This document shows positions 29,457-44,005 of a stretch of 64,000 nucleotides of DNA, piece by piece. The translations under genes and the position numbers were made by a program. The notes beneath the pieces are model-generated. The model was not told where the DNA came from. It ran no database searches and saw only the letters and a program-made list of their open reading frames with translations. The DNA is taken from IMG/VR virus record IMGVR_UViG_3300021197_001489, positions 186,001 through 250,000 of that record. One strand, written 5' to 3'. How positions within the stretch are numbered: the first letter of the stretch is position 1; every line of letters starts with the position of its first letter.

Positions 29457-30206
29457 ATGATACATGTAACTTGGCAACCAGGATGTTATGGTAATTATGT
29501 CATGCAATCGATATATGCATACAGTAATCTTAGCAACGGTACTGATATACATATCGAATCCACTGGTAGTAGTCATGGATTTAATATTCGGAACAAATTT
29601 TTTATATACGATCATAGTTGCAGTCCAACAGCAGATGTAATTATTTCAGCAAATTGTAGACATCAACTTGACTACGCAAATAACCAACTTGTGAAATTTT
29701 TTTACAATGATATTCACAACTATGTGGAAAGGTCCTTTCCTAATTATTCAATGGACTCTAATGGACTCTGGCCACACGGTAGTAGATGGGCAACGCGAGA
29801 ATGGATTAGTTTTTGGTTAGTAGATGCATTGGAAAATGCATACGGCACTATAGAAGGTCACTTTGATACTGTCGACTTATTTGATGACAATGTTTTTCCT
29901 GCATTAATTAACCGTTTGGGCTTGACTATGGCCGTTGATAATGCTACAATGAAACTCAATCAAGCAAGATGGGTTGAACAACAACGTTTCCATAATTCGC
30001 AACAACGGTGTGAACTATGGATACAGGACATTAGATATCAGTTATCTTCAGACTCACCTTGCCAAACTTTATTAGATGAAGCATATGTACAACATCGTTT
30101 AAGACAACAAGGATATGAAATACGCTGTGATGGACTTGATGTTTTTCCGACAAACAGTAGAGATTTACGAGAATTAATTTATGAGAACAGCCACACTAAT
30201 AATTAA
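29457..30206 (+). CDS. Hypothetical protein, possibly sulfotransferase-like; paralog of 4491-5366
   Basis: WQPGCYG; C-terminal EAYVQHRLRQQGYEIRCDGLDVFPT. Confidence 0.55.
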   Translation: MIHVTWQPGCYGNYVMQSIYAYSNLSNGTDIHIESTGSSHGFNIRNKFFIYDHSCSPTADVIISANCRHQLDYANNQLVKFFYNDIHNYVERSFPNYSMDSNGLWPHGSRWATREWISFWLVDALENAYGTIEGHFDTVDLFDDNVFPALINRLGLTMAVDNATMKLNQARWVEQQRFHNSQQRCELWIQDIRYQLSSDSPCQTLLDEAYVQHRLRQQGYEIRCDGLDVFPTNSRDLRELIYENSHTNN

Positions 30207-31644
30207 TGATGAGGTAAACCTAAAAGTATCAGGCTTAGAACTTGATGTTCGCAAAAAGCTGGTCAATACATTTAAGTATGATGTTCCACATGCACGTTAC
30301 TTGCCAGCAGTTCGTCTTGGCCGCTGGGATGGCAAAGTTGCATACTTTCAGATGGGCGGCAGCACATATTTAAACTTGCTTCCTAACATTATTCCTATCC
30401 TGGAAGACTTTAACTATGACATTGAAGTAGAAGACAACAGAGACTATCAAACTGTGTTCAAGTTTGAGCCTATTACTGAAGATTCATACAGCGATATACT
30501 TTGGCCAAAGAACCACCCAGCTGCTGGGCAACCAGTTATGTTGCGTGATTATCAAGTTGAGATTATAAACAGCTTTTTGGAAAACCCACAGTGCATACAG
30601 GAAATTGCAACTGGCGCAGGCAAAACTATCATGACTGCGGCATTAAGTGAGCGTGTGGAAAACTATGGTCGTTCAATTGTTATTGTGCCAAACAAAAGTC
30701 TAGTGACACAAACTGAAGCAGACTATGCAAACATGCAACTGGATGTTGGTGTGTTCTATGGTGACAGAAAAGAGTTTGGGCACAAGCACACTATTTGCAC
30801 TTGGCAAAGTCTAAATGTGCTGTTAAAGAATACTAAAAATCAAACTGTAGATATTACTATACATGAATTTTTAGAAGACGTTGTATGTGTAATGGTAGAC
30901 GAAGTACATATGGCCAAAGCAGATGCACTCAAAACACTGCTAACAGGTGTAATGAGCAAGATACCCATGCGTTGGGGATTGACAGGCACAATACCCAAAG
31001 AGCCATTTGAGTTTCAAGCACTGCATTGCAGTTTAGGTCCTGTTATCAATCAACTTGCAGCCAGTGAATTGCAAGACAAAGGTGTGCTTGCAAACTGTCA
31101 TGTAAATGTTGTGCAGTTGATTGATCACGCCGAATTTTCAAACTATCAAAGCGAATTAAAATATCTTTTTGAAGAAAAAGGCAGACTTGATACAATTGCA
31201 GGCTTGGTTGCAGAAGTAAATAAAACTGGTAATACACTTGTGCTGGTAGACAGAATATCAGCAGGACAAGAACTGTTAAGCAGACTGGGCGATGATGCTG
31301 TGTTTGTAAGCGGCAGTACCAAAGCAAAAGCAAGGCAGGATGAATATGATGAAGTGGCTACTGCGACGGGTAAAATCATTGTTGCAACATACGGTGTCGC
31401 TGCCGTTGGCATTAATCTACCACGTATTTTTAATCTTGTATTACTGGAGCCAGGTAAAAGTTTTGTACGGGTTATACAAAGTATTGGTCGCGGTATTCGG
31501 AAAGCGGAAGACAAAGACCACGTCCAAATCTGGGACATAACAAGCACCTGTAGATTTGCCAAGCGGCATTTAACAAAACGCAAAGCATTTTATCGAGAAG
31601 CAAACTATCCATTTACTGTAGAAAAGTTGGATTGGAATGGGTGA
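30181..31644 (+). CDS. uvsW: SF2 DNA helicase UvsW
   Basis: WDGK, LRDYQ, ATGAGKT, DEVH, GLTGT, QSIGRGIR. Confidence 0.92.
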   Translation: MRTATLIINDEVNLKVSGLELDVRKKLVNTFKYDVPHARYLPAVRLGRWDGKVAYFQMGGSTYLNLLPNIIPILEDFNYDIEVEDNRDYQTVFKFEPITEDSYSDILWPKNHPAAGQPVMLRDYQVEIINSFLENPQCIQEIATGAGKTIMTAALSERVENYGRSIVIVPNKSLVTQTEADYANMQLDVGVFYGDRKEFGHKHTICTWQSLNVLLKNTKNQTVDITIHEFLEDVVCVMVDEVHMAKADALKTLLTGVMSKIPMRWGLTGTIPKEPFEFQALHCSLGPVINQLAASELQDKGVLANCHVNVVQLIDHAEFSNYQSELKYLFEEKGRLDTIAGLVAEVNKTGNTLVLVDRISAGQELLSRLGDDAVFVSGSTKAKARQDEYDEVATATGKIIVATYGVAAVGINLPRIFNLVLLEPGKSFVRVIQSIGRGIRKAEDKDHVQIWDITSTCRFAKRHLTKRKAFYREANYPFTVEKLDWNG

Positions 31645-32953: not shown

Positions 32954-33392
32954 ACTAAACATAGCAAACGAAATGCGCTGTTTTGACAGCAAGGATCGCA
33001 GTTTCTATGACAGCCTCACTGATGAGGAACGCAAGAAGTTTTCAAACTATCTCATGGTACGTTGGGGCAGTGCAGTACAAGGTCCTAGTGAACTGCAAGA
33101 ATACTATTTGGTTGCCTGCAATGAAAGATTGAACAAATATTTCTTTGACATCAACCGGCATCCCAAGTTACAATGGTTATGTGCTACAAGTGTTAGTCCC
33201 GGAATGGGCAATCACAGGCACCAATGGATTGCACCAAAGAAGAAAGAAAAAGGCAACAACGAAGGCAAGAAAATGCTTATGGAACTGTATCCTGCAATGA
33301 AAGCAGACGAGATAGAACTGTTAAGCAAGCTCATGACAAACAAAGAACTAAAGGAATACATGCGTGACAGCGGAGTTGCAGACAAAAAGTGA
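32943..33392 (+). CDS. Putative clamp-loader small subunit (T4 gp62-like)
   Basis: F..YLMVRW, N..., HP.LQW, HQWI..KK; replication context. Confidence 0.55.
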   Translation: MSDKLNIANEMRCFDSKDRSFYDSLTDEERKKFSNYLMVRWGSAVQGPSELQEYYLVACNERLNKYFFDINRHPKLQWLCATSVSPGMGNHRHQWIAPKKKEKGNNEGKKMLMELYPAMKADEIELLSKLMTNKELKEYMRDSGVADKK

Positions 33393-33393
33393 A

Positions 33394-34065
33394 ATGTATG
33401 CATGCAAGTATTGCGGACGCGAGTTTAGACGCGAAAGCACACTGGCAGTTCATGTTTGCGAACAAAAGAAACGTTTCCAAGAAGAAAAAGAAGTAGGCGT
33501 GCAAATTGGTTTGCAGGCTTATCTGCGCTTCTATACTGTAACACAAGGCAGTGCTAAACTGAAAACATACAATGACTTTGCAAAATCACCGTACTACAAA
33601 GCGTTTGTAAAGTTTGGCAGGTACACTGTAGACATTAACGCTATCAATGTGCCAAAGTTTTTAGATTGGCTGCTTAAACACAACAAGAAAATTGATCACT
33701 GGGCCAGAGACAGTGTGTATGACGAATACTTGTTGCACTACATCAAAATTGAAGCACTACAAGATGCACTTGAAAGAGGAATCCAACATTCAATAAAGTG
33801 GAGCGAAGACACAGGAAATCCAGCACATGACTTCCTACGCTATGGAAATGAAAACAGGATTGCATTTGCTATAAGTACTGGGCGTATCAGCCCGTGGTTA
33901 TTGTTTAACAGTGAATCAGGACAGGCATATTTGGCTAACATGAATCCAGATCAAACAAAAATAGTTATGCCCTGGATTGATCCAGATTTTTGGACTAAAA
34001 AGTTTAGAGACTATCCAGCAGACCAAGTCTACTGCGAAGAAATACTAAAACAGGCAGGATGGTAA
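33394..34065 (+). CDS. Conserved protein with N-terminal C2H2/C2HC zinc finger
   Basis: CKYCGREF....L..HVC; GRISPW. Confidence 0.7.
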   Translation: MYACKYCGREFRRESTLAVHVCEQKKRFQEEKEVGVQIGLQAYLRFYTVTQGSAKLKTYNDFAKSPYYKAFVKFGRYTVDINAINVPKFLDWLLKHNKKIDHWARDSVYDEYLLHYIKIEALQDALERGIQHSIKWSEDTGNPAHDFLRYGNENRIAFAISTGRISPWLLFNSESGQAYLANMNPDQTKIVMPWIDPDFWTKKFRDYPADQVYCEEILKQAGW

Positions 34066-34066
34066 A

Positions 34067-34909
34067 ATGGAACAACATGGTAATGGTAATATCCGAACAA
34101 ATTTATTACTCAATGATTTCTTAAAATATAATGAACACATGATAAAAAACAAAACAGTGTTAGATTTAGCATGTCACGATGGTGTATCCACTGGTAACAT
34201 AAAAAACCTTGGCTCCAAATACATATATGGAGTTGAAGCAAGAAAAGAATTAATCGACACTGCAAAAAATAATGTTCAGGAAAATGTTGAATTTTTTGTT
34301 GGCGATATACAGGACGACAGCTTAATAAGTCCATTGGTTAAAAAAAGTGATACTGTCATAGTACTGGGTGCATTGTATCATTTGTATAATCATTTTGGGT
34401 TTTTTTCTTTAATATTAAAACCTAATATCGAACATGTATTAATTGAAACTATTGCTGGACCAGAAACGTTAAATCCAGAAATGTTTTGGGGATTTGAAAA
34501 AGTAGATTCAAGCAAGATGGGATGGCACGATACAGCTAATGTTATTCCAAATGGTACTCCAAATTTGTCTTGGATTTTACAGGCCGCCAAGGCATTTGGA
34601 TTTGATTGTGATTGGGTAAAATACTACGGATTTTTACGTCCAAAAACTAGATACACTGTAACATTAAGCGAGTATACAAGTATTAAAGACGAAAGTTGGC
34701 CAGACTATGCAGATTTTCTTACCAGAGATAGGTTACCAGATAATATTCTAAATGATATATCCACCTTGTTAGGAGACAACACCGATTCAGGATCATCTAA
34801 AAGGGTTTTAATACGATTGTACAATAAAAATTTAGTGAAGTCTACTCCGATAGATATAGAAAAACATTATGTTTGGGATCCGTCTGTTGACAAACAAGGA
34901 GATTTATAG
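34067..34909 (+). CDS. Class I SAM methyltransferase with C-terminal Y..IKD.SWPD module
   Basis: VLDLACHDG, GVEAR, LGALYHL, LIET. Confidence 0.8.
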   Translation: MEQHGNGNIRTNLLLNDFLKYNEHMIKNKTVLDLACHDGVSTGNIKNLGSKYIYGVEARKELIDTAKNNVQENVEFFVGDIQDDSLISPLVKKSDTVIVLGALYHLYNHFGFFSLILKPNIEHVLIETIAGPETLNPEMFWGFEKVDSSKMGWHDTANVIPNGTPNLSWILQAAKAFGFDCDWVKYYGFLRPKTRYTVTLSEYTSIKDESWPDYADFLTRDRLPDNILNDISTLLGDNTDSGSSKRVLIRLYNKNLVKSTPIDIEKHYVWDPSVDKQGDL

Positions 34910-34915
34910 TATAAT
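34887..34915 (+). promoter_or_regulatory. Consensus sigma70 promoter
   Basis: TTGACA 34887-92, 17 nt, TATAAT 34910-15. Confidence 0.85.
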
Positions 34916-34961
34916 GTTTCACACAGATAGAATTACAATTTACATTCCAAAGGAGAAAAAA

Positions 34962-35186
34962 ATGGGATTGACAAGACCTAAAGTATCACAAGTTGAAAAA
35001 AAGCCCAAAAGCCAAGATGGACATTTTTGGGTAAGCATGGTAAAGAGTGTACTGCGACTGATTGGATGCTATGCACTGTGGACTGCCGCAACCGTAATTG
35101 GTGGTGTAGTAGCCGTTCCGCTAGTACTAGCAGCAGGGTTGTTTGCAGCCGCCGAAGTGCTAGGCATTGTTGAAGAATTGGTATGA
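34962..35186 (+). CDS. Small membrane protein
   Basis: AAGGAG RBS; two hydrophobic segments; AEVLGIVEELV end. Confidence 0.7.
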   Translation: MGLTRPKVSQVEKKPKSQDGHFWVSMVKSVLRLIGCYALWTAATVIGGVVAVPLVLAAGLFAAAEVLGIVEELV

Positions 35187-35743
35187 GTGCTGACGTAGAC
35201 ATTGACTTTGCTGACAGACAGCAAATAATTGACTTGATTCGGTGTACACCTGCACGACAAAATGCAGATGGCCGCAAGCATAACAGTGGTGTCTACGTTA
35301 CTCCAATTCCACGAGATGCACAACATGATTGTGCTAGCATAACATACGAAGAAGCAGAAGATCGAGGATACTTCAAACTGGACTTGCTCAATATGAGTGT
35401 GTACAGTTTGATTCGTAACCAAGCACACTATGACAGTTTGCTAGCACAAGAACCACAGTGGCAGCTGATGTGGGAGCAACCAGGAATTGTTGAACAATTG
35501 GTACATGTGGGCAACTATGCACAACTGCTAAAAGAAATGCAACCAGACAGCATACAACGTATGGCTGCATTTATATCAATTATTCGTCCAGGAAAAGCAC
35601 ATCTAAAGAACAAGCCCTGGGACGAAGTGTTTGCCAGTGTGTGGGATGGTGATAGCACAGATGGATTTGTGTTTAAGAAAAGTCATGCAATTAGCTATGC
35701 AACGCTAGTAGCATTGCATCTCAACTTATTAACGGAAATATAA
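35183..35743 (+). CDS. Miniature family-C (DnaE-like) DNA polymerase core, 186 aa
   Basis: DVDIDF, KHNSGVY, GYFKLDLL, IIRPG, FKKSHAISY. Confidence 0.8.
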   Translation: MSADVDIDFADRQQIIDLIRCTPARQNADGRKHNSGVYVTPIPRDAQHDCASITYEEAEDRGYFKLDLLNMSVYSLIRNQAHYDSLLAQEPQWQLMWEQPGIVEQLVHVGNYAQLLKEMQPDSIQRMAAFISIIRPGKAHLKNKPWDEVFASVWDGDSTDGFVFKKSHAISYATLVALHLNLLTEI

Positions 35744-35746
35744 TTA

Positions 35747-36475
35747 ATGGCTATTCTTTACAGTAACGGTTGTAGTTTTACTGCTAACTTTGATGTTGAC
35801 CGCAGTATGCGATATCCAACACTAATTGGCAAACACTTTGTCTGGGAAGTGATTGATCATGCACTGCCTCAAAGTTGCAATAGCAAGATCATTAGGTGCA
35901 CAATACGTGATTGTTTGCAACTGCTGGACCGGAATGAAAAGATCACAGCATTAATACAATTAACGTTTCTTGAAAGATTTGAATATGCAGGCGACCCTAA
36001 TGGGGCAAACCAGTGGCAATACAGTAATGGTACAATAAGGGACGAGTTTGAAGTAATTAAATCTAACGATGACGCCAATTGGCCAAAAGAAATTAGAAAG
36101 TATGCTAACAGCATTTTTATGCATCAACGCTATAATGCATTATGTGCGCAACTATTTTCTAACTTAGTAGGATTGATTAGTTTCTTTAAGGCTAACAATA
36201 TCAAATACCGTATTTTTTCAGGACCTTCTCTTGTTAATGGTGTCAATCACAATGTGCCTATTAACCCGGTCAATAGCCGGGCTATTGAATGTAAAGACAC
36301 TATATTACAAGATGCGTTTTACCAGCATTGTATATCAAAAGATACTAATGTATTATCATTAATTGACTTTAACATGCTAAGTGTTGCAGACGCAAATGTG
36401 CCTGCACATCCAACACCCGAAGGCATGCAAAAAATAGCTGATTACTTTATTAATCTACTTTGCGAACAAGCGTAA
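35747..36475 (+). CDS. SGNH/GDSL hydrolase-like protein
   Basis: NGCSFT, CN..IIR, IQLT..ER, HPT..G...IA. Confidence 0.65.
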   Translation: MAILYSNGCSFTANFDVDRSMRYPTLIGKHFVWEVIDHALPQSCNSKIIRCTIRDCLQLLDRNEKITALIQLTFLERFEYAGDPNGANQWQYSNGTIRDEFEVIKSNDDANWPKEIRKYANSIFMHQRYNALCAQLFSNLVGLISFFKANNIKYRIFSGPSLVNGVNHNVPINPVNSRAIECKDTILQDAFYQHCISKDTNVLSLIDFNMLSVADANVPAHPTPEGMQKIADYFINLLCEQA

Positions 36476-37858: not shown

Positions 37859-38602
37859 GTGTCAATCAAACGTGTTATAGCATTTGGCGATAGTTGGACA
37901 TATGGCGACGAGCTTGTTGATCCTGCGCTGCGCCACTTAGACGAAGACCAATTCCGAGATCATTATGACAGTAACAAACCATGGCGTCTGGCTAACTGCT
38001 ATGCTGGACTTGTTGCTGATCATTATGGCGTTGAACTAGACAACATGGCTTTTCCTGGCAGCAGTCTTGAAAGCATGCGCTGGACATTGCAATGGTTAAT
38101 CAAACACAGTGGGCAAGATTTGCAGGATGCATTGTTGCTTGTGGGACTAACTGATAGTAGCAGACAAAGTTGGTTTAATCCTTTACACGAATCCAGCATG
38201 AAAGATCCACCTTGGAACAGACACATGCACGGAACGTGGCTTACACAACCCAATTCAGATATAAATGATAACTGGTTTAAATTGCAAAAATTATGGTTAG
38301 GCATGAGTTATCACAAAGAGTGGAGCGAGTTCAACTTTCAACAAACAATTAATCTGTTTGATTATGCTTCAATGACCACTGGCGCTACTGTAATACAATT
38401 CAGTGTTCTTGAAAATAATTGGACAGCTAATGTACCAACACTGCTTTATCCAGGCATGAACTGGCGCACTATATTGCAGCAAAAAAAGATGTCTGAAGGT
38501 ATACAACCTTTTGCTTCGGGCGGCCACCCCAATGAAAAAGGACATGAAATTATATCAAAACACTTGATTGAACACATAAAGCATGCTAAAATAATAGCAT
38601 AA
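37859..38602 (+). CDS. SGNH/GDSL hydrolase-like protein
   Basis: AFGDSWT, A.PGSS, VGLT..SR, GHPNEKGH. Confidence 0.7.
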   Translation: MSIKRVIAFGDSWTYGDELVDPALRHLDEDQFRDHYDSNKPWRLANCYAGLVADHYGVELDNMAFPGSSLESMRWTLQWLIKHSGQDLQDALLLVGLTDSSRQSWFNPLHESSMKDPPWNRHMHGTWLTQPNSDINDNWFKLQKLWLGMSYHKEWSEFNFQQTINLFDYASMTTGATVIQFSVLENNWTANVPTLLYPGMNWRTILQQKKMSEGIQPFASGGHPNEKGHEIISKHLIEHIKHAKIIA

Positions 38603-39579
38603 TGATAGATGTTCTAAGTTACTTGCCTAATGAGCGTAAAGCTACAGTATCTGGCTGGGTCAGTTTCAATGGGCCTTGCTGTGTTCACAACGGCGAAAGT
38701 CAGGACAAACGCAAACGTGGTGGCATACGCCAACAAGATGATGAGTGGAGTTATCACTGTTTTAACTGTGGCTTCACTGCTAGTTTTACACCCGGGCGTC
38801 CAGTAAGCTACAAAGCAAGACGGCTACTTGAATGGTTAGGCGTTGACAGTGTAGACATTGAACGTCTTAACTTAGAAAGTCTCAAGCGTAAAAGTTTGCT
38901 GGATTTAACCACTGAACGCAACCAGATACGTCATGTAGATATCAGTTTTAACGAAACTGAAGTACCCGAAGGTGTGGAACTGATTGATCCTGAACTAGAG
39001 CAGCATCAACGCTATGTTGAGTACCTGGCAAACAGGGGCATAGTGTTAGAGTATCCATTTCTAGTTGATCGCAAACGTAAACCGCGTGATAGGATTGTGG
39101 TTCCGTTTACATACAAGAACAGAATTGTAGGACATACATCACGCTACTTGGACAATCGCATGCCCAAGTTTATCAACAGTCAGCAGCAGGGTTATGTGTT
39201 TGGTTATGATTTACAAAAGCCACATTGGACAAGTGCTATTGTTACAGAAGGCATATTTGATGCACTCAGTATCAGTGGTTTGGCTGTTATGCATGACACT
39301 ATCAGCCCACAGCAAGCACAGTTACTAAAACAATTAAAGCGCAAGATCATTGTTGTGCCAGATCAGGACAAGGCCGGGTTGAGTATTATAGACGCAGCAA
39401 TTGAAAATCGTTTTGCAGTAAGCATACCAGAATGGCCCAATGCTGTTAAAGATGTTAACGATGCTGTGGTAAAATATGGTGTTGCAAGTACAATGTTGCA
39501 GATACACAACAACGCAGAAACAAGCAAGATCAAAATTGAAATGTATAAGAAACGTCTGCAAAGGAAACTAAGTGAGTAG
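38602..39579 (+). CDS. DNA primase (zinc ribbon + TOPRIM)
   Basis: PCC..YHCFNCG; VTEGIFDA; PDQDKAG; KDVND. Confidence 0.9.
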   Translation: MIDVLSYLPNERKATVSGWVSFNGPCCVHNGESQDKRKRGGIRQQDDEWSYHCFNCGFTASFTPGRPVSYKARRLLEWLGVDSVDIERLNLESLKRKSLLDLTTERNQIRHVDISFNETEVPEGVELIDPELEQHQRYVEYLANRGIVLEYPFLVDRKRKPRDRIVVPFTYKNRIVGHTSRYLDNRMPKFINSQQQGYVFGYDLQKPHWTSAIVTEGIFDALSISGLAVMHDTISPQQAQLLKQLKRKIIVVPDQDKAGLSIIDAAIENRFAVSIPEWPNAVKDVNDAVVKYGVASTMLQIHNNAETSKIKIEMYKKRLQRKLSE

Positions 39580-40261
39580 ACTTTACATATTTGGAGATAG
39601 CTACAGCACACCATACTACTGTGTTGAACCGCAGCAAAGTTGGTGGGGGCTTATAGCGAAACAACTTGGTCTTCCGGTAAGCAACTACAGCTGGCCAGGC
39701 AACAACATTGACAGTATACAGCACATTATTGTTAGCAACCAAGATCAGTTTAACAAAGATGATTTTGTTATAATTGGAATACCACCTGTAGAAAGACAAA
39801 CCATATTTAAAAAAGACGCTGCTCCAAAATCTGTAACACATTTCAATAAAGACGTAGTACAAACACACATATCTGATGTATTAAGCCACCAGGGATTAGA
39901 TCAGTGTACCATGCACGAGATGGGCAAAGACATTGTTAATGTATACAATGTTAGTTGGCAAGAAGCCAAAATACTTAAAGATATAATTATGTTGAGTCAC
40001 TGGCTTGATTCAGTTGTGGACAAACATCTTATAGTGAATCTAAGTGTACCGTTTCAACAGCCCACTGAGTGGCCTACACTTAAACATTTACAAGATCAAG
40101 CACGGAAAAATAAAAACATAAAAGTGTTTGCTGACACTTACTACAGTGTTAACCACTCAGTGAACAAACCAGTAGATTATGATACACACGGTTGGTTTGG
40201 ACATCATGGTGCTGAAGGAAACGCATTATGGTATAACAGTGTACTTAGGACAATGATATGA
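39572..40261 (+). CDS. SGNH/GDSL hydrolase-like protein
   Basis: IFGDSYS, PGNN, ER, GHHG..GN. Confidence 0.6.
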   Translation: MSRLYIFGDSYSTPYYCVEPQQSWWGLIAKQLGLPVSNYSWPGNNIDSIQHIIVSNQDQFNKDDFVIIGIPPVERQTIFKKDAAPKSVTHFNKDVVQTHISDVLSHQGLDQCTMHEMGKDIVNVYNVSWQEAKILKDIIMLSHWLDSVVDKHLIVNLSVPFQQPTEWPTLKHLQDQARKNKNIKVFADTYYSVNHSVNKPVDYDTHGWFGHHGAEGNALWYNSVLRTMI

Positions 40262-40911
40262 GATTTTATTTTAATGGATGTAGTATTACCCAAGGCGCTG
40301 GCTTTGCTAACGAAAAGTTAAATCCAAACATTTATCCTAACTTGATTGCAACTGATTATATCAATGATGCATCAGGCGGAGCAAGCAATTTAAAGATATT
40401 TTTACATTCAAGTAGAGCAATTATTGACAACTTGGCTGATATTTATATTGTGCAATGGAGCGCATTGCACCGTCATTGGGTTTATGCAGCACCAGATCAA
40501 GGTACCTATATAGGATCAGTGGCAGATTCACATCAATTAAAAGACTTTGTTGCTCAATATCAGTTGCTCAATCACGATTATGGTAATATACTACAACTAA
40601 TAGATTTTTGTCGTATTCTTCAGGCCTTGGCAAACAGTTGTAATGCCAAGTTGTTGTTTGTTAATGGACTTGTTGATTGGAGTAACAAAATTGATTGGAT
40701 GCACAAACTAGTAGAGGATGCTAGCAGTGATCATGAAAGATTTGTTGAAAACTTGCAAAACAATATGGAATTGGTAGATTGGAACTTGTGGATAAATCCC
40801 TGGAGCAGCATGTATGACAGTAGACTTGATGAAGCTAACGATGGATTACATCCAGGGCCGTTAACACATAAACACATAGCCGACCAAATAAGGGATAAAT
40901 TAATAGCATGA
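40258..40911 (+). CDS. SGNH/GDSL hydrolase-like protein
   Basis: NGCSIT, GGASN, VQWS..R, DGLHPG...H..IA. Confidence 0.7.
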   Translation: MRFYFNGCSITQGAGFANEKLNPNIYPNLIATDYINDASGGASNLKIFLHSSRAIIDNLADIYIVQWSALHRHWVYAAPDQGTYIGSVADSHQLKDFVAQYQLLNHDYGNILQLIDFCRILQALANSCNAKLLFVNGLVDWSNKIDWMHKLVEDASSDHERFVENLQNNMELVDWNLWINPWSSMYDSRLDEANDGLHPGPLTHKHIADQIRDKLIA

Positions 40912-42314
40912 CTGATTACACATATGACGTACAAAAATTATTCCTAGAGATGATAATGCAAGATGCAGAAAGCTATCTGCGTGTGCAAAATATTTTCAAT
41001 GTGGAAAACTTTGACAGAGACTTACGCGATGCAGCCGAGCTTATTTACAACCACGCTGACCAACACAAAACACTTCCAGAACGCTCGCAGCTAAAAGCAG
41101 TAACAGGTACTGACTTGCTGGAGATTCCAGATCTCAATGAGGGCCACACTGATTGGTTTTTGGGAGAGTTTGAAGCATTTACTAGGCGCAGTGAACTAGA
41201 ACGAGCTATCTTAAAAAGTGCAGACTTGCTAGAAAAAGGCGAGTATGACCCAGTTGAAAAGCTAATCAAGGACGCAGTGCAAATAAGTTTAACAAAAGAC
41301 TTGGGCACAGATTATTTTGAAGATCCGAGAGCAAGACTTGCAGCACTCAAAGACAATAACGGACAGAACAGTACTGGCTGGAACAACTTAGACAAGTTGT
41401 TGTATGGCGGATTTAACAGAGGCGAACTACAGATATTTGCTGGCGGCTCTGGATCGGGTAAAAGTTTGTTTATGCAAAACCTAGCAGTGAACTGGATGGA
41501 AGCTGGACTAAGCGGAGTTTACATTACACTTGAATTAAGTGAAGGTTTGACTGCTATGCGTATTGATAGTATGTTGACAAATACGCCAAGTAAACAGCTA
41601 TTCAAAGATCTAGATACTGTTGAAATGAAAGTAAAGATGATGGGCAAGAAAGCAGGAGGTCTGCAAATAAAGTACATGCCTGCACAAAGCAACGTCAATG
41701 ACATAAGAGCATTTGTAAAAGAACTAAGCATCAAACAAGGCAAAAGCATAGACTTTATGTGCATTGACTACTTGGATTTGCTTATGCCAGTAAGTGCTAA
41801 GGTATCGCCAAATGATCTGTTTGTGAAAGACAAGTATGTATCAGAAGAACTGCGTAACTTGGCAAGAGAACTTAACATACTGTTTGTTACAGCATCTCAG
41901 CTGAACAGAGGTGCTGTAGAAGAAGTAGAGTTTGATCACAGTCATATATCTGGTGGTATTAGCAAGATCAATACTGCTGACAATGTGTTTGGTATCTTTA
42001 CAAGCAGAGCAATGCGTGAAAGAGGACGTTATCAACTACAGCTAATGAAGACCAGAAGTTCAAGCGGTGTTGGAATGAAAGTTGATTTGGAGTTTGATGC
42101 TGAAAGTTTGCGTATACGTGACTTAGGAGATGATGAAGAGTATCAACAGTTTAAGAAACAATCAAGTTCGATTTATGATCAAATAAAAGCAAAGTCGCTT
42201 GTAACAGACAGCGAAACAGAAGCAACTGTGGCGGATGAGCCTGGCAAGATTGTTGCTGACGTACAAAGCACAAAACTTAAACAGATGTTAGCTGGCATTA
42301 AGCAAAAAGGTTAA
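40908..42314 (+). CDS. gp41: Replicative DnaB-like helicase (T4 gp41-like)
   Basis: STGW..LD, GGSGSGKS, YITLE, IDYLDL, TASQLNR, MKTR. Confidence 0.93.
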   Translation: MTDYTYDVQKLFLEMIMQDAESYLRVQNIFNVENFDRDLRDAAELIYNHADQHKTLPERSQLKAVTGTDLLEIPDLNEGHTDWFLGEFEAFTRRSELERAILKSADLLEKGEYDPVEKLIKDAVQISLTKDLGTDYFEDPRARLAALKDNNGQNSTGWNNLDKLLYGGFNRGELQIFAGGSGSGKSLFMQNLAVNWMEAGLSGVYITLELSEGLTAMRIDSMLTNTPSKQLFKDLDTVEMKVKMMGKKAGGLQIKYMPAQSNVNDIRAFVKELSIKQGKSIDFMCIDYLDLLMPVSAKVSPNDLFVKDKYVSEELRNLARELNILFVTASQLNRGAVEEVEFDHSHISGGISKINTADNVFGIFTSRAMRERGRYQLQLMKTRSSSGVGMKVDLEFDAESLRIRDLGDDEEYQQFKKQSSSIYDQIKAKSLVTDSETEATVADEPGKIVADVQSTKLKQMLAGIKQKG

Positions 42315-44005
42315 GCATACTGATCAATAGGCATTGCTTTTACGTTCTTGCGTTTTACTTTTAAAAAGTTGCTGTTGTCTTTGGTCCACATTTGTCCTTC
42401 GCCAACTATAACACTGTTACGAGCATACTTCACAGGACGGTCGACCACAAGATCAACATAACGCCCTTCGCCAACACCCAGTGTTATAAAATGTATGTAA
42501 TTTTTACTATCGCTTTTAAACACTCTACTGTTTGCTACTATTCCGGCAAACTGAAACTTGTCTAAAAACAAGTTTTGCAATCCCATGTTTGGCAAAAAGC
42601 CAGGGCTGTTCCATGCACCGTGCTCTTTGAAACTCTCAACAGGATCTTCTGTGATCCAGTTGTCAAAGCCTAAGTCACGTAGATCCCAGCCAGCACGTTT
42701 TGCTTCGTTGCGATATACCCAACGTGCATATGATCCTTGACAGTGCTTCAAGCAAGCACGCCAAAATTCTTTTGGATTGTGTACTTTATGATATGCCAAC
42801 GCCCATATAAGTCTACCCAAGTTAACTGCGTGTGCTCGGCACAAGCCAAATCCACTTAGGCTTTGCATTTGTTCGTAGATGTCATGCTTGTCTGGATGAT
42901 CACCTAGTTTTGCCATAAACTGCATCATCTTTTCTTCGTTCTTTTTGGCAAATGCTCGTCTGTACATGTCCGCTTCATAGGGATTGATGCCAATCAGTTT
43001 CATTATTTTGTGTATGGCATCGTCTTCATATACTATGGCATTCTTTTGTATGCCTTTTTCACTCCAGTCACGGAACCAACTGGCCTTGCGTCTACCTTCC
43101 ATAGCAACAGGACGTACCAAAGCACTAGCAAACACACAGTCTTCGACTCCTGTTGGCTGCAACGCTCGGAACAGTCTTTTCATGGTCGGCGATTCACCTT
43201 GTGTGACACCAAGTACATCGCCTCTGCACAACAAGTCACTGACTGCTTCATCTTGTTTTGGATATGAGTCTAGTCTTGTGTGAGGATCTATTTCTAATAG
43301 CTGTGATAATCCTCTGTTGGCCAGTATATCTACTTTCAAATGTTCCAGGTCTTCAACTTCGTTTTTGTCTAACAGTATGAGATTGTCGTCACGGAATAGA
43401 CTTTTGGGTAATGCTCTGTCAAACACAAGCACACCCCCACAGTGCTTGCTTATGCAACGTTTCTTGCCCATTAATTTGCGTTCAATGCGTTTTGCTTCTT
43501 TTTCGTCGACACCCAGTTTTGCATAATCTATGTCTTTTGGCAATCTGCCTTTTGCACCTAGACGTTTTGCTGCTTCGCGTTTTGCACTCTTTTCTCTGTA
43601 AAGCACATAGTTTGATATCCTGGCACTCTGTGTTGGCCATTTATCAAATACACGTTGCATTGCAAGTTCTTGTTTGTGATGCGGTATATCAATATCCACA
43701 TCAGGCAAGTCGTCTCTGTGTGGGTTTAAGAAACGTGCCAGTGGTATGTTCCACTCAATCGGATCAACATCAGTTATGCCCATGAGGTAGCAAACCAAAC
43801 TGCTACCAGCACTGCCGCGTGTCATGTGTGGTATGTCACTGTTGAGATCAAGTATAAGTCTTATTTTGAGAAAGTAATCTGTAAAACGCTGCTGAAGTAT
43901 AATTTCAAATTCTTCTGCTAGTCTATCTTGATATTCGTTGCCTACAGGAGTAGGTCTTCTAAATTGTTCTAATAATAATTCTATTTGCTCTAGTTCTGTT
44001 TTCAT
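42311..44005 (-). CDS. dnaE: PHP-less family-C DNA polymerase (DnaE-like), 564 aa
   Basis: RGSAGSSLVCYLMGITDVDP, PDVDID, KHCGG, KVDIL, QGES, ALVRP, GLCRAHA, C-terminal OB-like strands. Confidence 0.9.
   Translation of the reverse strand: MKTELEQIELLLEQFRRPTPVGNEYQDRLAEEFEIILQQRFTDYFLKIRLILDLNSDIPHMTRGSAGSSLVCYLMGITDVDPIEWNIPLARFLNPHRDDLPDVDIDIPHHKQELAMQRVFDKWPTQSARISNYVLYREKSAKREAAKRLGAKGRLPKDIDYAKLGVDEKEAKRIERKLMGKKRCISKHCGGVLVFDRALPKSLFRDDNLILLDKNEVEDLEHLKVDILANRGLSQLLEIDPHTRLDSYPKQDEAVSDLLCRGDVLGVTQGESPTMKRLFRALQPTGVEDCVFASALVRPVAMEGRRKASWFRDWSEKGIQKNAIVYEDDAIHKIMKLIGINPYEADMYRRAFAKKNEEKMMQFMAKLGDHPDKHDIYEQMQSLSGFGLCRAHAVNLGRLIWALAYHKVHNPKEFWRACLKHCQGSYARWVYRNEAKRAGWDLRDLGFDNWITEDPVESFKEHGAWNSPGFLPNMGLQNLFLDKFQFAGIVANSRVFKSDSKNYIHFITLGVGEGRYVDLVVDRPVKYARNSVIVGEGQMWTKDNSNFLKVKRKNVKAMPIDQYA

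What the first reader, a model, noticed from the sequence alone, without database searches (positions are those of the whole stretch)
35183..35743. 186-aa miniature family-C polymerase retaining all three catalytic aspartates, alongside a second larger DnaE
Seen in sequence: DVDIDF, KHNSGVY, FKLDLL, IRPG and FKKSHAISY appear in the order of the DnaE palm/finger motifs (PDxDxD, H.GG, K.D.L, RPG, FNKSH). The PHP domain, the RGS motif, most of the thumb and fingers, and the OB domain are absent. It is translationally coupled to a small membrane protein behind a perfect sigma70 promoter, so it looks maintained rather than decayed. Cellular DnaE is over 1000 aa. Inference: this is a split or minimal polymerase/nucleotidyltransferase whose RGS-containing half is encoded outside the window. 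The phage therefore carries two differently reduced family-C enzymes.
Basis: partly seen in the sequence, partly recalled or inferred. Interest (0 to 1): 0.62.

Follow-up and report, generated by a model that had tools for sequence, protein, structure and literature searches.

The report
Half of a split mini DNA polymerase
This 186-residue gene of an uncultured marine jumbo phage is the metal-binding half of a two-gene, stripped-down relative of the bacterial replicative polymerase (Pol III alpha); the kind was described by comparative genomics in 2021, is very common in phages, and I found no biochemical test of it.

Summary
Window 35183..35743 (+) is an intact 186-aa ORF with the five motifs in DnaE order. 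It matches PHROG 11778 'DNA polymerase' (E 3.7e-56). Its AlphaFold model (pLDDT 87) aligns only to family-C polymerases: Z 9.2 to Taq Pol III alpha, and E. coli residues 401-778, starting at the catalytic Asp401. The next unrelated fold scores Z 3.4.

The missing GRGSS half is a 162-aa gene 91 kb away, outside the window (G000:C1:312704-313192). It ends at ...EFLR, just before the point where the 186-aa protein begins with DVDIDF. Both halves are under purifying selection (median dN/dS 0.10 and 0.12). Both occur once in each of five related 300-340 kb phage genomes, and in 96 and 95 cultured-phage records. A complex model supports binding (ipSAE 0.90, best control 0.01).

The phage also encodes a T4-like PolB and a separate 564-aa single-chain DnaE-like enzyme without a PHP domain (window 42311..44005, minus strand).

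This is not new. Iyer et al. 2021 (PMC7824862) described this split minimal Pol III alpha in group 2.2 jumbo phages. The extra DnaE-like gene is limited to part of this lineage, and the small membrane gene upstream is specific to one clade. Activity is untested.

The parts
35183..35743 (+). Gene for the C-terminal (Mg2+-binding palm plus reduced fingers) subunit of the split minimal Pol III alpha; 186 aa, called B here. Predicted catalytic carboxylates are D4, D6 and D67. Finger motifs are R135-P136-G137 and K165-K166-S167-H168.
   Evidence: dN/dS 0.096.
34962..35186 (+). Small predicted membrane protein (74 aa counted from the conserved MGLTRPK start). Its TGA stop overlaps the ATG of B (ATGA). 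It is clade-specific, not a family feature.
   Evidence: Sequence. It is conserved upstream of B in most relatives that are 70-94% identical, with a hydrophobic segment (19-residue Kyte-Doolittle maximum 1.4-2.2). It is absent from more distant relatives and from PA5oct-like phages. No Pfam or PHROG family.
34887..34915 (+). Sigma-70-type promoter-like site, TTGACA-17 nt-TATAAT, upstream of the small ORF and B.
   Evidence: 12 of 12 consensus positions. The same site is present at the same offset in the nearest relative, L008. Perfect sites occur in 10 of 57 distinct upstream regions, but at varying positions. Function not shown.
33364..34065 (+). C2H2 zinc-finger protein (PHROG 11058). It is the conserved upstream neighbour of B across the family and lies directly adjacent to B in PA5oct-like phages.
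34067..34909 (+). SAM-dependent methyltransferase gene inserted between the C2H2 gene and the small ORF. It is an accessory insertion, not part of the enzyme.
   Evidence: Pfam Methyltransf_25 and Methyltransf_11. Absent from the syntenic genome G001. A contig variant joins 34065 to 34917 without it.
42311..44005 (-). Separate single-chain DnaE-like polymerase of 564 aa, without PHP. All palm motifs lie in one chain (RGSAGS, PDVDID, KHCGG, KVDIL, VRP, CRAHA).
   Evidence: Found in only 1 of 5 related large genomes. The closest phage record is 37.5% identical.
38602..39579 (+). DnaG/Toprim-type primase. It is part of the replication module in which B sits.
   Evidence: Primase also lies downstream of B in PAC2 and RaK2.
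40908..42314 (+). DnaB-like replicative helicase. It is convergent with the DnaE-like gene and overlaps it by 4 nt.
30181..31644 (+). UvsW-like helicase, at the upstream end of the replication and recombination module.
   Evidence: UvsY and UvsW lie upstream of B in PAC2.

Best explanation
The 186-aa protein (B) is the C-terminal subunit of the two-gene 'minimal Pol III alpha' of T4-like group 2.2 jumbo phages.

Shown or modelled:
- B supplies the beta-strands of the Pol-beta-like palm that carry the metal-binding aspartates. D4 and D6 correspond to E. coli D401 and D403, and D67 to D555.
- B also supplies a much-reduced finger module with the RPG and FNKSH-type motifs.
- The partner A (162 aa) is encoded 91 kb away, outside the window. 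It supplies the preceding palm strand and the GRGSS loop, which in Pol III alpha holds the triphosphate of the incoming nucleotide.
- In the model the two chains assemble without a covalent link, so the active site spans both polypeptides.

Inferred, not shown:
- The roughly 40-kDa heterodimer is an active DNA-templated nucleotidyltransferase. I put this at about 0.5.
- It acts beside the phage's T4-like PolB in repair, gap filling or synthesis of one strand.
- It lacks a thumb, clamp-binding region and OB domain, so it probably depends on other phage replication proteins for DNA contact.

The 564-aa DnaE-like protein in the window is an independent, complete single-chain enzyme. It is not the partner of B.
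For: Identity:
- PHROG 11778, E 3.7e-56.
- The fold matches only family-C polymerases: Z 9.2, and E. coli 401-778.
- Motif residues are invariant.

Partner:
- The A gene has PF07733 above its cut-off and an invariant GVGRGSSVAS.
- 61 of 62 IMG/VR copies of A end in EFL[R/K] followed by a stop.
- In the close relatives B starts with MSADxDxD; more distant homologues carry up to about 20 residues before the DxDxD strand.

Co-occurrence:
- 96 phage records hold B and 95 hold A, with the same genus counts.
- Each of 5 related 300-340 kb genomes has one A, one B and one PolB, with A and B 68-105 kb apart.

Binding model:
- ipSAE 0.90, 0.90 and 0.89; best of 3 controls 0.01.
- The mark was reached by 58 of 80 solved complexes and 2 of 110 mismatched pairs. 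These counts hold only roughly, because my own alignments were used.
- Partner pLDDT was 90 and at least 95% of contacts agreed between runs.
- B residues 7-9 touch A residues 127-128, the strand before GRGS.
- The catalytic C-terminus of A is poorly ordered when folded alone (pLDDT 41-69).

Selection: median dN/dS is 0.096 for B and 0.116 for A.

Context: B sits among UvsW, primase and DnaB.

Published description of the same split enzyme: PMC7824862.
Against: - I found no biochemical evidence for this family.
- The complex score is a model's own confidence. Pol III alpha structures are in training sets, so it may reflect the likeness to one folded chain rather than binding of these copies.
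- Sequence-only links from B to DnaE are weak: Pfam below cut-off, PDB HMM E 0.24, hhalign against the phage's own DnaE-like protein E 0.13.
- Foldseek of A alone is inconclusive.
- About 115 finger residues lie between RPG and FNKSH in E. coli, against 26 here. From my own knowledge, that E. coli stretch holds arginines that contact the nucleotide. Templated synthesis is therefore not assured.
- Metatranscriptome contigs over B come from relatives and do not prove transcription.
Confidence: 0.85

Rival explanations
1. The A/B heterodimer is a real enzyme but not a replicative or templated DNA polymerase. It could be a nucleotidyltransferase of another kind, such as template-independent tailing, primer synthesis or extension, lesion bypass, or synthesis of a nucleotide signal.
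For: Thumb, clamp-binding, HhH and OB modules are absent, and the finger segment between RPG and FNKSH is cut from about 115 residues to 26. The phage already has a T4-like PolB and, in this lineage, a complete DnaE-like enzyme. The Pol-beta-like fold supports many non-replicative nucleotidyltransferases (established knowledge).
Against: The finger motifs RPG and FNKSH are invariant. The gene sits in the replication module next to primase and helicase in distant phages. The closest structural matches are only family-C polymerases.
Confidence: 0.3
2. B works alone, or as an accessory or complement of the 564-aa DnaE-like protein encoded 7 kb away, rather than with the distant 162-aa protein.
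For: The two genes are close together in the window, and B alone lacks the nucleotide-binding GS loop.
Against: The 564-aa protein has every palm motif in one chain and needs no complement. It is present in only 1 of 5 related genomes, all of which keep A and B. PA5oct-like and RaK2-like phages do not appear among its full-length matches. A and B co-occur in essentially the same 95-96 phage records.
Confidence: 0.04
3. The ORF is a decaying fragment of a once full-length DnaE gene.
For: It is one sixth the size of cellular DnaE and lacks most domains.
Against: All 80 IMG/VR homologues are intact and of the same length. dN/dS is 0.096. There are 7545 protein clusters at E <= 1e-3, all listed ones about 184-216 aa. 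Catalytic residues are invariant down to 28% identity.
Confidence: 0.01
4. The two halves are joined after translation by a split intein, as in cyanobacterial DnaE.
For: Split DnaE genes joined by trans-splicing inteins are known in cyanobacteria (established knowledge; papers listed).
Against: A ends at EFLR and B begins at MSADVDIDF, so homologous Pol III sequence runs to the very termini. There is no room for an N-intein of about 100 aa or a C-intein of about 35 aa. From my own knowledge, the cyanobacterial split lies far downstream in the protein, not in the palm.
Confidence: 0.01

Closest known systems
Split minimal DNA polymerase III alpha of group 2.2 jumbo phages (Iyer, Anantharaman, Krishnan, Burroughs, Aravind 2021, Viruses 13:63, PMC7824862); C-terminal unit = PHROG 11778
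   Same: Two stand-alone proteins from distant genes: an N-terminal NTP-binding unit and a C-terminal Mg2+- and template-binding unit. No PHP or other Pol III domains in these two proteins. Accompanied by a T4-like family B polymerase. The same conserved neighbours are present (C2H2 protein upstream, primase downstream).
   Different: Only 38-44% identical to the cultured members (PA5oct-like, RaK2, 121Q, GAP32). It belongs to an uncultured marine clade. A small membrane-protein gene and a methyltransferase gene are inserted upstream. This phage and one relative also carry a complete single-chain DnaE-like enzyme, which that paper says such phages lack.
Bacterial replicative polymerase Pol III alpha / DnaE (E. 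coli 2HNH, Thermus aquaticus 3E0D) and PolC (3F2B)
   Same: Pol-beta-like palm with DxD and a third Asp; the H-x-G-G-type, RPG and FNKSH motifs appear in the same order. The structural alignment covers the whole model (Z 8.3-9.2).
   Different: One sixth of the size. It lacks the PHP domain, thumb, most of the fingers, the clamp-binding region and the OB domain. The GS loop is on a separate polypeptide. Pfam thresholds are not reached for the 186-aa half.
Phage single-chain 'DnaE-like DNA polymerase III alpha' (Pbunavirus and actinophage type), represented here by the 564-aa protein at window 42311..44005
   Same: A family-C palm and fingers without an active PHP-type editing domain, encoded by a phage.
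   Different: That enzyme is a single chain, keeps a thumb-length insert and full fingers, and passes both Pfam models. BLASTP between it and the 186-aa protein is not significant (E 0.19).
Cyanobacterial split DnaE joined by a trans-splicing intein
   Same: The catalytic subunit of a family-C polymerase is encoded by two distant genes.
   Different: No intein halves are present here. The split lies inside the palm, between the GS loop and the DxD strand. Assembly must be non-covalent.

Membership tests
Split minimal Pol III alpha, C-terminal unit (PHROG 11778; Iyer et al. 2021) | Full-length match to the family profile | tested here: met
   E 3.7e-56; residues 3-185 against profile positions 7-193 of 197.
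Split minimal Pol III alpha, C-terminal unit (PHROG 11778; Iyer et al. 2021) | A separate, distantly encoded N-terminal unit with the NTP-binding GS loop in the same genome | tested here: met
   A 162-aa ORF at G000:C1:312704-313192, 91 kb from B, with PF07733 at 32.3 bits (cut-off 23.9) and GVGRGSSVAS. One copy of each half in 5 of 5 related genomes.
Split minimal Pol III alpha, C-terminal unit (PHROG 11778; Iyer et al. 2021) | Conserved Mg2+-binding acidic residues | tested here: met
   D4, D6, D8 and D67 are invariant in 62 sequences and kept in homologues 28-44% identical.
Split minimal Pol III alpha, C-terminal unit (PHROG 11778; Iyer et al. 2021) | Accompanied by a T4-like family B polymerase | tested here: met
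   An 888-aa ORF with PF00136 at E 6.6e-31 in the own genome, and in 5 of 5 relatives.
Split minimal Pol III alpha, C-terminal unit (PHROG 11778; Iyer et al. 2021) | The two units reconstitute one enzyme | tested here: inconclusive
   Prediction only. ipSAE 0.90 against a best control of 0.01; partner pLDDT 90; at least 95% contact agreement between runs. The mark was reached by 58 of 80 solved complexes and 2 of 110 mismatched pairs, and these counts hold only roughly here. No experiment.
Split minimal Pol III alpha, C-terminal unit (PHROG 11778; Iyer et al. 2021) | Nucleotidyl-transfer (polymerase) activity | not testable with these tools
   I found no biochemical report in the paper library.
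Family C DNA polymerase catalytic subunit (DnaE/PolC) | Pol-beta-like palm with three catalytic carboxylates | tested here: met
   Structural alignment to E. coli 401-778 and Taq 460-835, Z 8.3-9.2. An HMM piece aligns the FKLDLL motif with the E. coli KFDFL motif, which contains D555.
Family C DNA polymerase catalytic subunit (DnaE/PolC) | GS (RGS) nucleotide-binding loop in the same polypeptide | tested here: not met
   Absent from the 186-aa protein; present only in the separate 162-aa protein.
Family C DNA polymerase catalytic subunit (DnaE/PolC) | N-terminal PHP domain | tested here: not met
   No PF02811 match anywhere in the 316-kb genome at E <= 1; the control rang in 14 of 14 genomes.
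Family C DNA polymerase catalytic subunit (DnaE/PolC) | Pfam DNA_pol3_alpha or DNA_pol3_finger above the gathering score | tested here: not met
   For the 186-aa protein only the finger model hits, at 14.3 bits against a cut-off of 22.
Family C DNA polymerase catalytic subunit (DnaE/PolC) | Thumb, clamp-binding and OB domains | tested here: not met
   22 residues lie between DVDIDF and KHNSG, where E. coli has over 100. The protein ends 14 residues after the FKKSHAISY motif. Model residues 3-186 span 378 E. coli residues.
Intein-split DnaE (cyanobacterial type) | N- and C-intein halves at the split ends | tested here: not met
   Homologous Pol III sequence runs to the last residue of A and from residue 3 of B, leaving no spare length.

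The most novel reading that the evidence does not exclude
The A/B pair is an autonomous, active DNA polymerase of about 350 residues in total. That would be the smallest family-C polymerase, with a Pol-beta-fold active site built across two polypeptides. In this marine lineage it would work in a three-polymerase system (PolB, a single-chain DnaE-like enzyme and the split enzyme) with divided roles. Iyer et al. proposed the minimal form as a model of the ancestral Pol III core. The three-polymerase combination contradicts their statement that such phages carry no other Pol III domains.
Probability: 0.3. Interest if true: 0.6.

Novelty: new member of a known kind. Interest (0 to 1): 0.4.

Why it matters
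The split minimal Pol III alpha is one of the oddest replication proteins known from phages, and it is far from rare. The word search found 7545 clusters for this half and at least 8000 for the partner, many from ocean samples. This window's DNA recurs in marine metagenomes from 13 studies.

If the heterodimer is active, it would define the minimal catalytic core of the bacterial replicase family and give a compact two-piece polymerase. I found no experiment on it.

- Purifying selection on both halves.
- A fixed split point.
- A supported heterodimer model in which the DxD strand pairs with the strand before the GS loop.
- Presence in a 141-kb phage, which is not a jumbo phage.
- Co-occurrence with a complete DnaE-like enzyme in part of one marine lineage.

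Tried and rejected
- Megablast of the locus against cultured phages found no near relative.
- Sequence-only routes from B to DnaE were weak. Pfam was sub-threshold. BLASTP and hhalign against the phage's own DnaE-like protein were not significant (E 0.19 and 0.13). The PDB HMM gave E 0.24. The link rests on the PHROG profile and on structure.
- Foldseek of the A model alone was inconclusive. E. coli Pol III appeared only at ranks 18 and 22, with E above 5. The membership of A rests on Pfam.
- A second IMG/VR scan with an alignment returned mostly the same close relatives.
- Pseudogene, intein-splicing and 'partner is the 564-aa DnaE' readings were rejected (see rivals).
- The small membrane protein as an obligate partner was rejected, because it is clade-specific.
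- The perfect promoter is shared with the nearest relative but not at a fixed place across the clade.
- Metatranscriptome contigs lie over B but come from relatives 90-95% alike in an RNA library that may hold DNA. They are not evidence of expression.
- No fused A+B protein appeared among 96 phage records, 6 genomes, the 120 best word-search hits, or the 30 nearest ESM Atlas clusters by features and by shape.

Full report
**What is there**

Window 35183..35743 (+) is an intact ORF of 186 aa. Its ATG overlaps the TGA of a small upstream ORF as ATGA. A 12-of-12 sigma-70 consensus, TTGACA-17-TATAAT, lies at 34887-34915.

The window is bases 186001-250000 of a 316,012-bp IMG/VR virus record, estimated 91% complete.

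**Is it family C?**

- Pfam sees only a sub-threshold DNA_pol3_finger hit around RPG (14.3 bits, cut-off 22).
- PHROGs places the protein end to end in phrog_11778 'DNA polymerase' (E 3.7e-56) and weakly in the 1190-position DnaE family phrog_405 (E 7e-4).
- An HMM of the family against PDB sequences finds only E. coli Pol III alpha. The match is weak (E 0.24) but comes in three collinear pieces that pair FKLDLL with KFDFL (D555), IIRPG with LFRPG, and FKKSH with FNKSH.
- An AlphaFold2 model built on 62 relatives is confident (pLDDT 87, pTM 0.71). The 16 best Foldseek matches in the PDB are all family-C polymerases.
- VIA-align gives Z 9.2 (rmsd 3.9 A, 183 residues aligned) to Thermus aquaticus Pol III alpha 460-835, and Z 8.3-8.5 to E. 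coli with model residues 3-186 on chain residues 401-778. The next unrelated fold has Z 3.4.

From established knowledge of E. coli Pol III alpha, D401, D403 and D555 are the catalytic carboxylates. The alignment therefore starts at the first of them. About 200 of the 378 E. coli residues spanned have no counterpart: the thumb and much of the fingers.

**The missing half**

A search of the whole genome with Pfam PF07733 found two places.

- The first is the 564-aa protein at window 42311..44005 (minus strand).
- The second is a 162-aa ORF at G000:C1:312704-313192 (L002:1231-1719), 91 kb downstream of the finding and outside the window.

The 162-aa protein (A) carries GVGRGSSVASY and ends ...DLDPTEFLR, followed by a stop. 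The phage's own single-chain DnaE-like protein reads ...RGSAGS...ARFLNPHRDDLPDVDIDI.... So A stops where the DxDxD strand should follow, and the 186-aa protein (B) begins MSADVDIDF.

A passes the Pfam cut-off (32.3 bits against 23.9) and aligns to the DnaE-like protein over its last 43 residues (hhalign E 2e-4). There is no room for intein halves at either end. The genome has no PHP domain at all.

**Maintained, not decayed**

- IMG/VR holds 388 relatives of B. The best 80 (65-94% identical) all have intact frames of the same length.
- Nei-Gojobori dN/dS has a median of 0.096 over 904 pairs and a maximum of 0.22.
- D4, D6, D8, H33, S35, G36, K65, D67, R135, P136, G137, K165 and H168 are invariant in 62 sequences. 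The motifs survive in homologues only 28-44% identical from PA5oct-like, RaK2, XacN1, CM1 and Alishewanella phages.
- For A, 62 IMG/VR genes are intact, 61 end in EFL[R/K] followed by a stop, and median dN/dS is 0.116. The split point is therefore fixed across the family.
- The word search found 7545 clusters for B (none with a Pfam domain) and at least 8000 for A (all listed hits carry PF07733 and many come from Tara samples).

**Do A and B belong together?**

tblastn finds B in 96 and A in 95 cultured-phage records, with matching genus counts. They always lie far apart: 44 kb in PAC2, 31 kb in 121Q and 34 kb in BF.

Five related 300-340 kb IMG/VR genomes each have exactly one A, one B and one family B polymerase, with A and B 68-105 kb apart.

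The complex test supports binding but does not show it.

- ipSAE was 0.90, 0.90 and 0.89, against a best control of 0.01.
- That mark was reached by 58 of 80 solved complexes and 2 of 110 mismatched pairs. These counts hold only roughly, because my own alignments were used.
- Partner pLDDT was 90, and at least 95% of contacts agreed between runs.
- B residues 7-9 (the DxD strand) touch A residues 127-128 (the strand before GRGS). The FKKSH helix of B touches the C-terminal helix of A.
- Folded alone, the last 40 residues of A are poorly ordered (pLDDT 41-69).

Solved Pol III alpha structures may have taught the model this packing. The pass therefore shows likeness to one folded palm, not proof that these copies bind.

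**Context**

B sits in a T4-like replication and recombination module:

| Window position | Gene |
|---|---|
| 30181..31644 | UvsW-like helicase |
| 33364..34065 | C2H2 protein |
| 34067..34909 | methyltransferase |
| 34962..35186 | small membrane ORF |
| 35183..35743 | B |
| 35747..36475 and 37859..38602 | two putative GDSL-like genes (weak or motif-only evidence) |
| 38602..39579 | primase |
| 40908..42314 | DnaB-like helicase |

In PAC2 the C2H2 gene directly precedes B and primase follows. In RaK2 primase also follows.

The small membrane ORF (conserved start MGLTRPK) precedes B only in the closer marine clade. Elsewhere other genes do. The upstream stop always abuts or overlaps the B start, by +1, +4 or +11 nt. 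Tight coupling is therefore general, but the membrane protein is not a partner.

A lies between a MazG-like gene and a Cpn10 (GroES) gene, as in Sinorhizobium phage Phosso.

**The second family-C enzyme**

The 564-aa protein has every palm motif in one chain and passes both Pol III Pfam models. It has no PHP domain. Its relatives are the 'DnaE-like' enzymes of Pbunavirus and actinophages (23-26% identity). The best match is an uncultured 484-kb phage at 37.5%.

Among five related genomes it is present only in G001, at 93% identity and in the same position. It is an independent, lineage-specific extra polymerase, not the partner of B. With the 888-aa PolB, this phage encodes three polymerase systems.

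**What is known**

Iyer et al. [quoted passage not shown] They suggest a role in one strand's synthesis or in repair. They also state that these phages contain no other Pol III domains.

I found no later experimental work. The finding is therefore a new, marine, uncultured member of a known kind. Two things go beyond that paper: the single-chain DnaE-like gene in G000 and G001, and the presence of both halves in a 141-kb Alishewanella phage.

**Mechanism**

Shown or modelled:
- The fold and motif identity of B.
- The complementary motif content of A.
- The fixed split point.
- Co-occurrence and purifying selection.
- A supported heterodimer model.

Inferred:
- A holds the triphosphate through the GS loop.
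- B binds two Mg2+ ions through D4, D6 and D67 and contacts the template through the RPG and FKKSH helices.
- The pair catalyses template-directed DNA synthesis. I put this at about 0.5.
- Because it lacks a thumb, clamp-binding region and OB domain, it would need other phage factors.
- A non-replicative nucleotidyltransferase role is not excluded.

**Habitat**

The stretch recurs in seawater and marine metagenomes from 13 studies. One run holds it almost letter for letter and may be its source. Two metatranscriptome runs hold short contigs of relatives over B, which is not proof of transcription.

No other genetic code was used.

Noticed in passing
window 34067..34909: The SAM-dependent methyltransferase gene between the C2H2 gene and the small ORF is a presence/absence polymorphism. 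It is missing from the syntenic genome G001, and a contig in run X18 joins 34065 to 34917 with 5 other letters between.
   Followed up: partly
window 42311..44005 (-): A complete single-chain DnaE-like polymerase of 564 aa without PHP; from the sequence I think it may end in an OB-like region (not tested). It is convergent with the DnaB-like helicase gene and overlaps it by 4 nt. It occurs in only 2 of 6 related large genomes (G000, G001), which contradicts the published statement that phages with the split enzyme lack other Pol III domains.
   Followed up: partly
G000:C1:311474-314686 (L002): The partner gene A lies between a MazG-like pyrophosphohydrolase gene (L002:47..379) and a Cpn10/GroES gene (L002:2218..2640). 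The same MazG ... A ... GroES order is annotated in Sinorhizobium phage Phosso.
   Followed up: partly
window 35747..36475, 37859..38602, 39572..40261: Up to three putative GDSL/SGNH-like acylhydrolase paralogues are scattered through the replication module. Only 37859..38602 (E 3e-4) and 39572..40261 (E 0.0077) have Pfam hits, both below the cut-offs; 35747..36475 rests on an N-terminal GCSFT motif alone. In some relatives (L078, L086, probably L013) an ORF with a similar N-terminal motif sits directly upstream of B.
   Followed up: no
L233 (Alishewanella phage Slickus01, 141,644 bp); the A match is in its sister record Slicko01: These 141-kb phages, which are not jumbo phages, carry the split enzyme with the B motifs intact. 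The B gene lies near an RFC small subunit gene and a primase/helicase gene, so the split enzyme is not confined to jumbo phages.
   Followed up: partly
P0003 (A), residues 125-162: The GS-loop end of A is poorly ordered in the AF2 model of A alone (pLDDT 41-69), while the partner's mean pLDDT is 90 in the complex model. This would fit folding on binding.
   Followed up: no
window 34887..34915 and L008: The perfect sigma-70 consensus promoter is kept at the same offset (-296 from the B start) in the nearest relative. Perfect sites occur at other offsets (-82, -94, -246) in 10 of 57 distinct relatives.
   Followed up: partly
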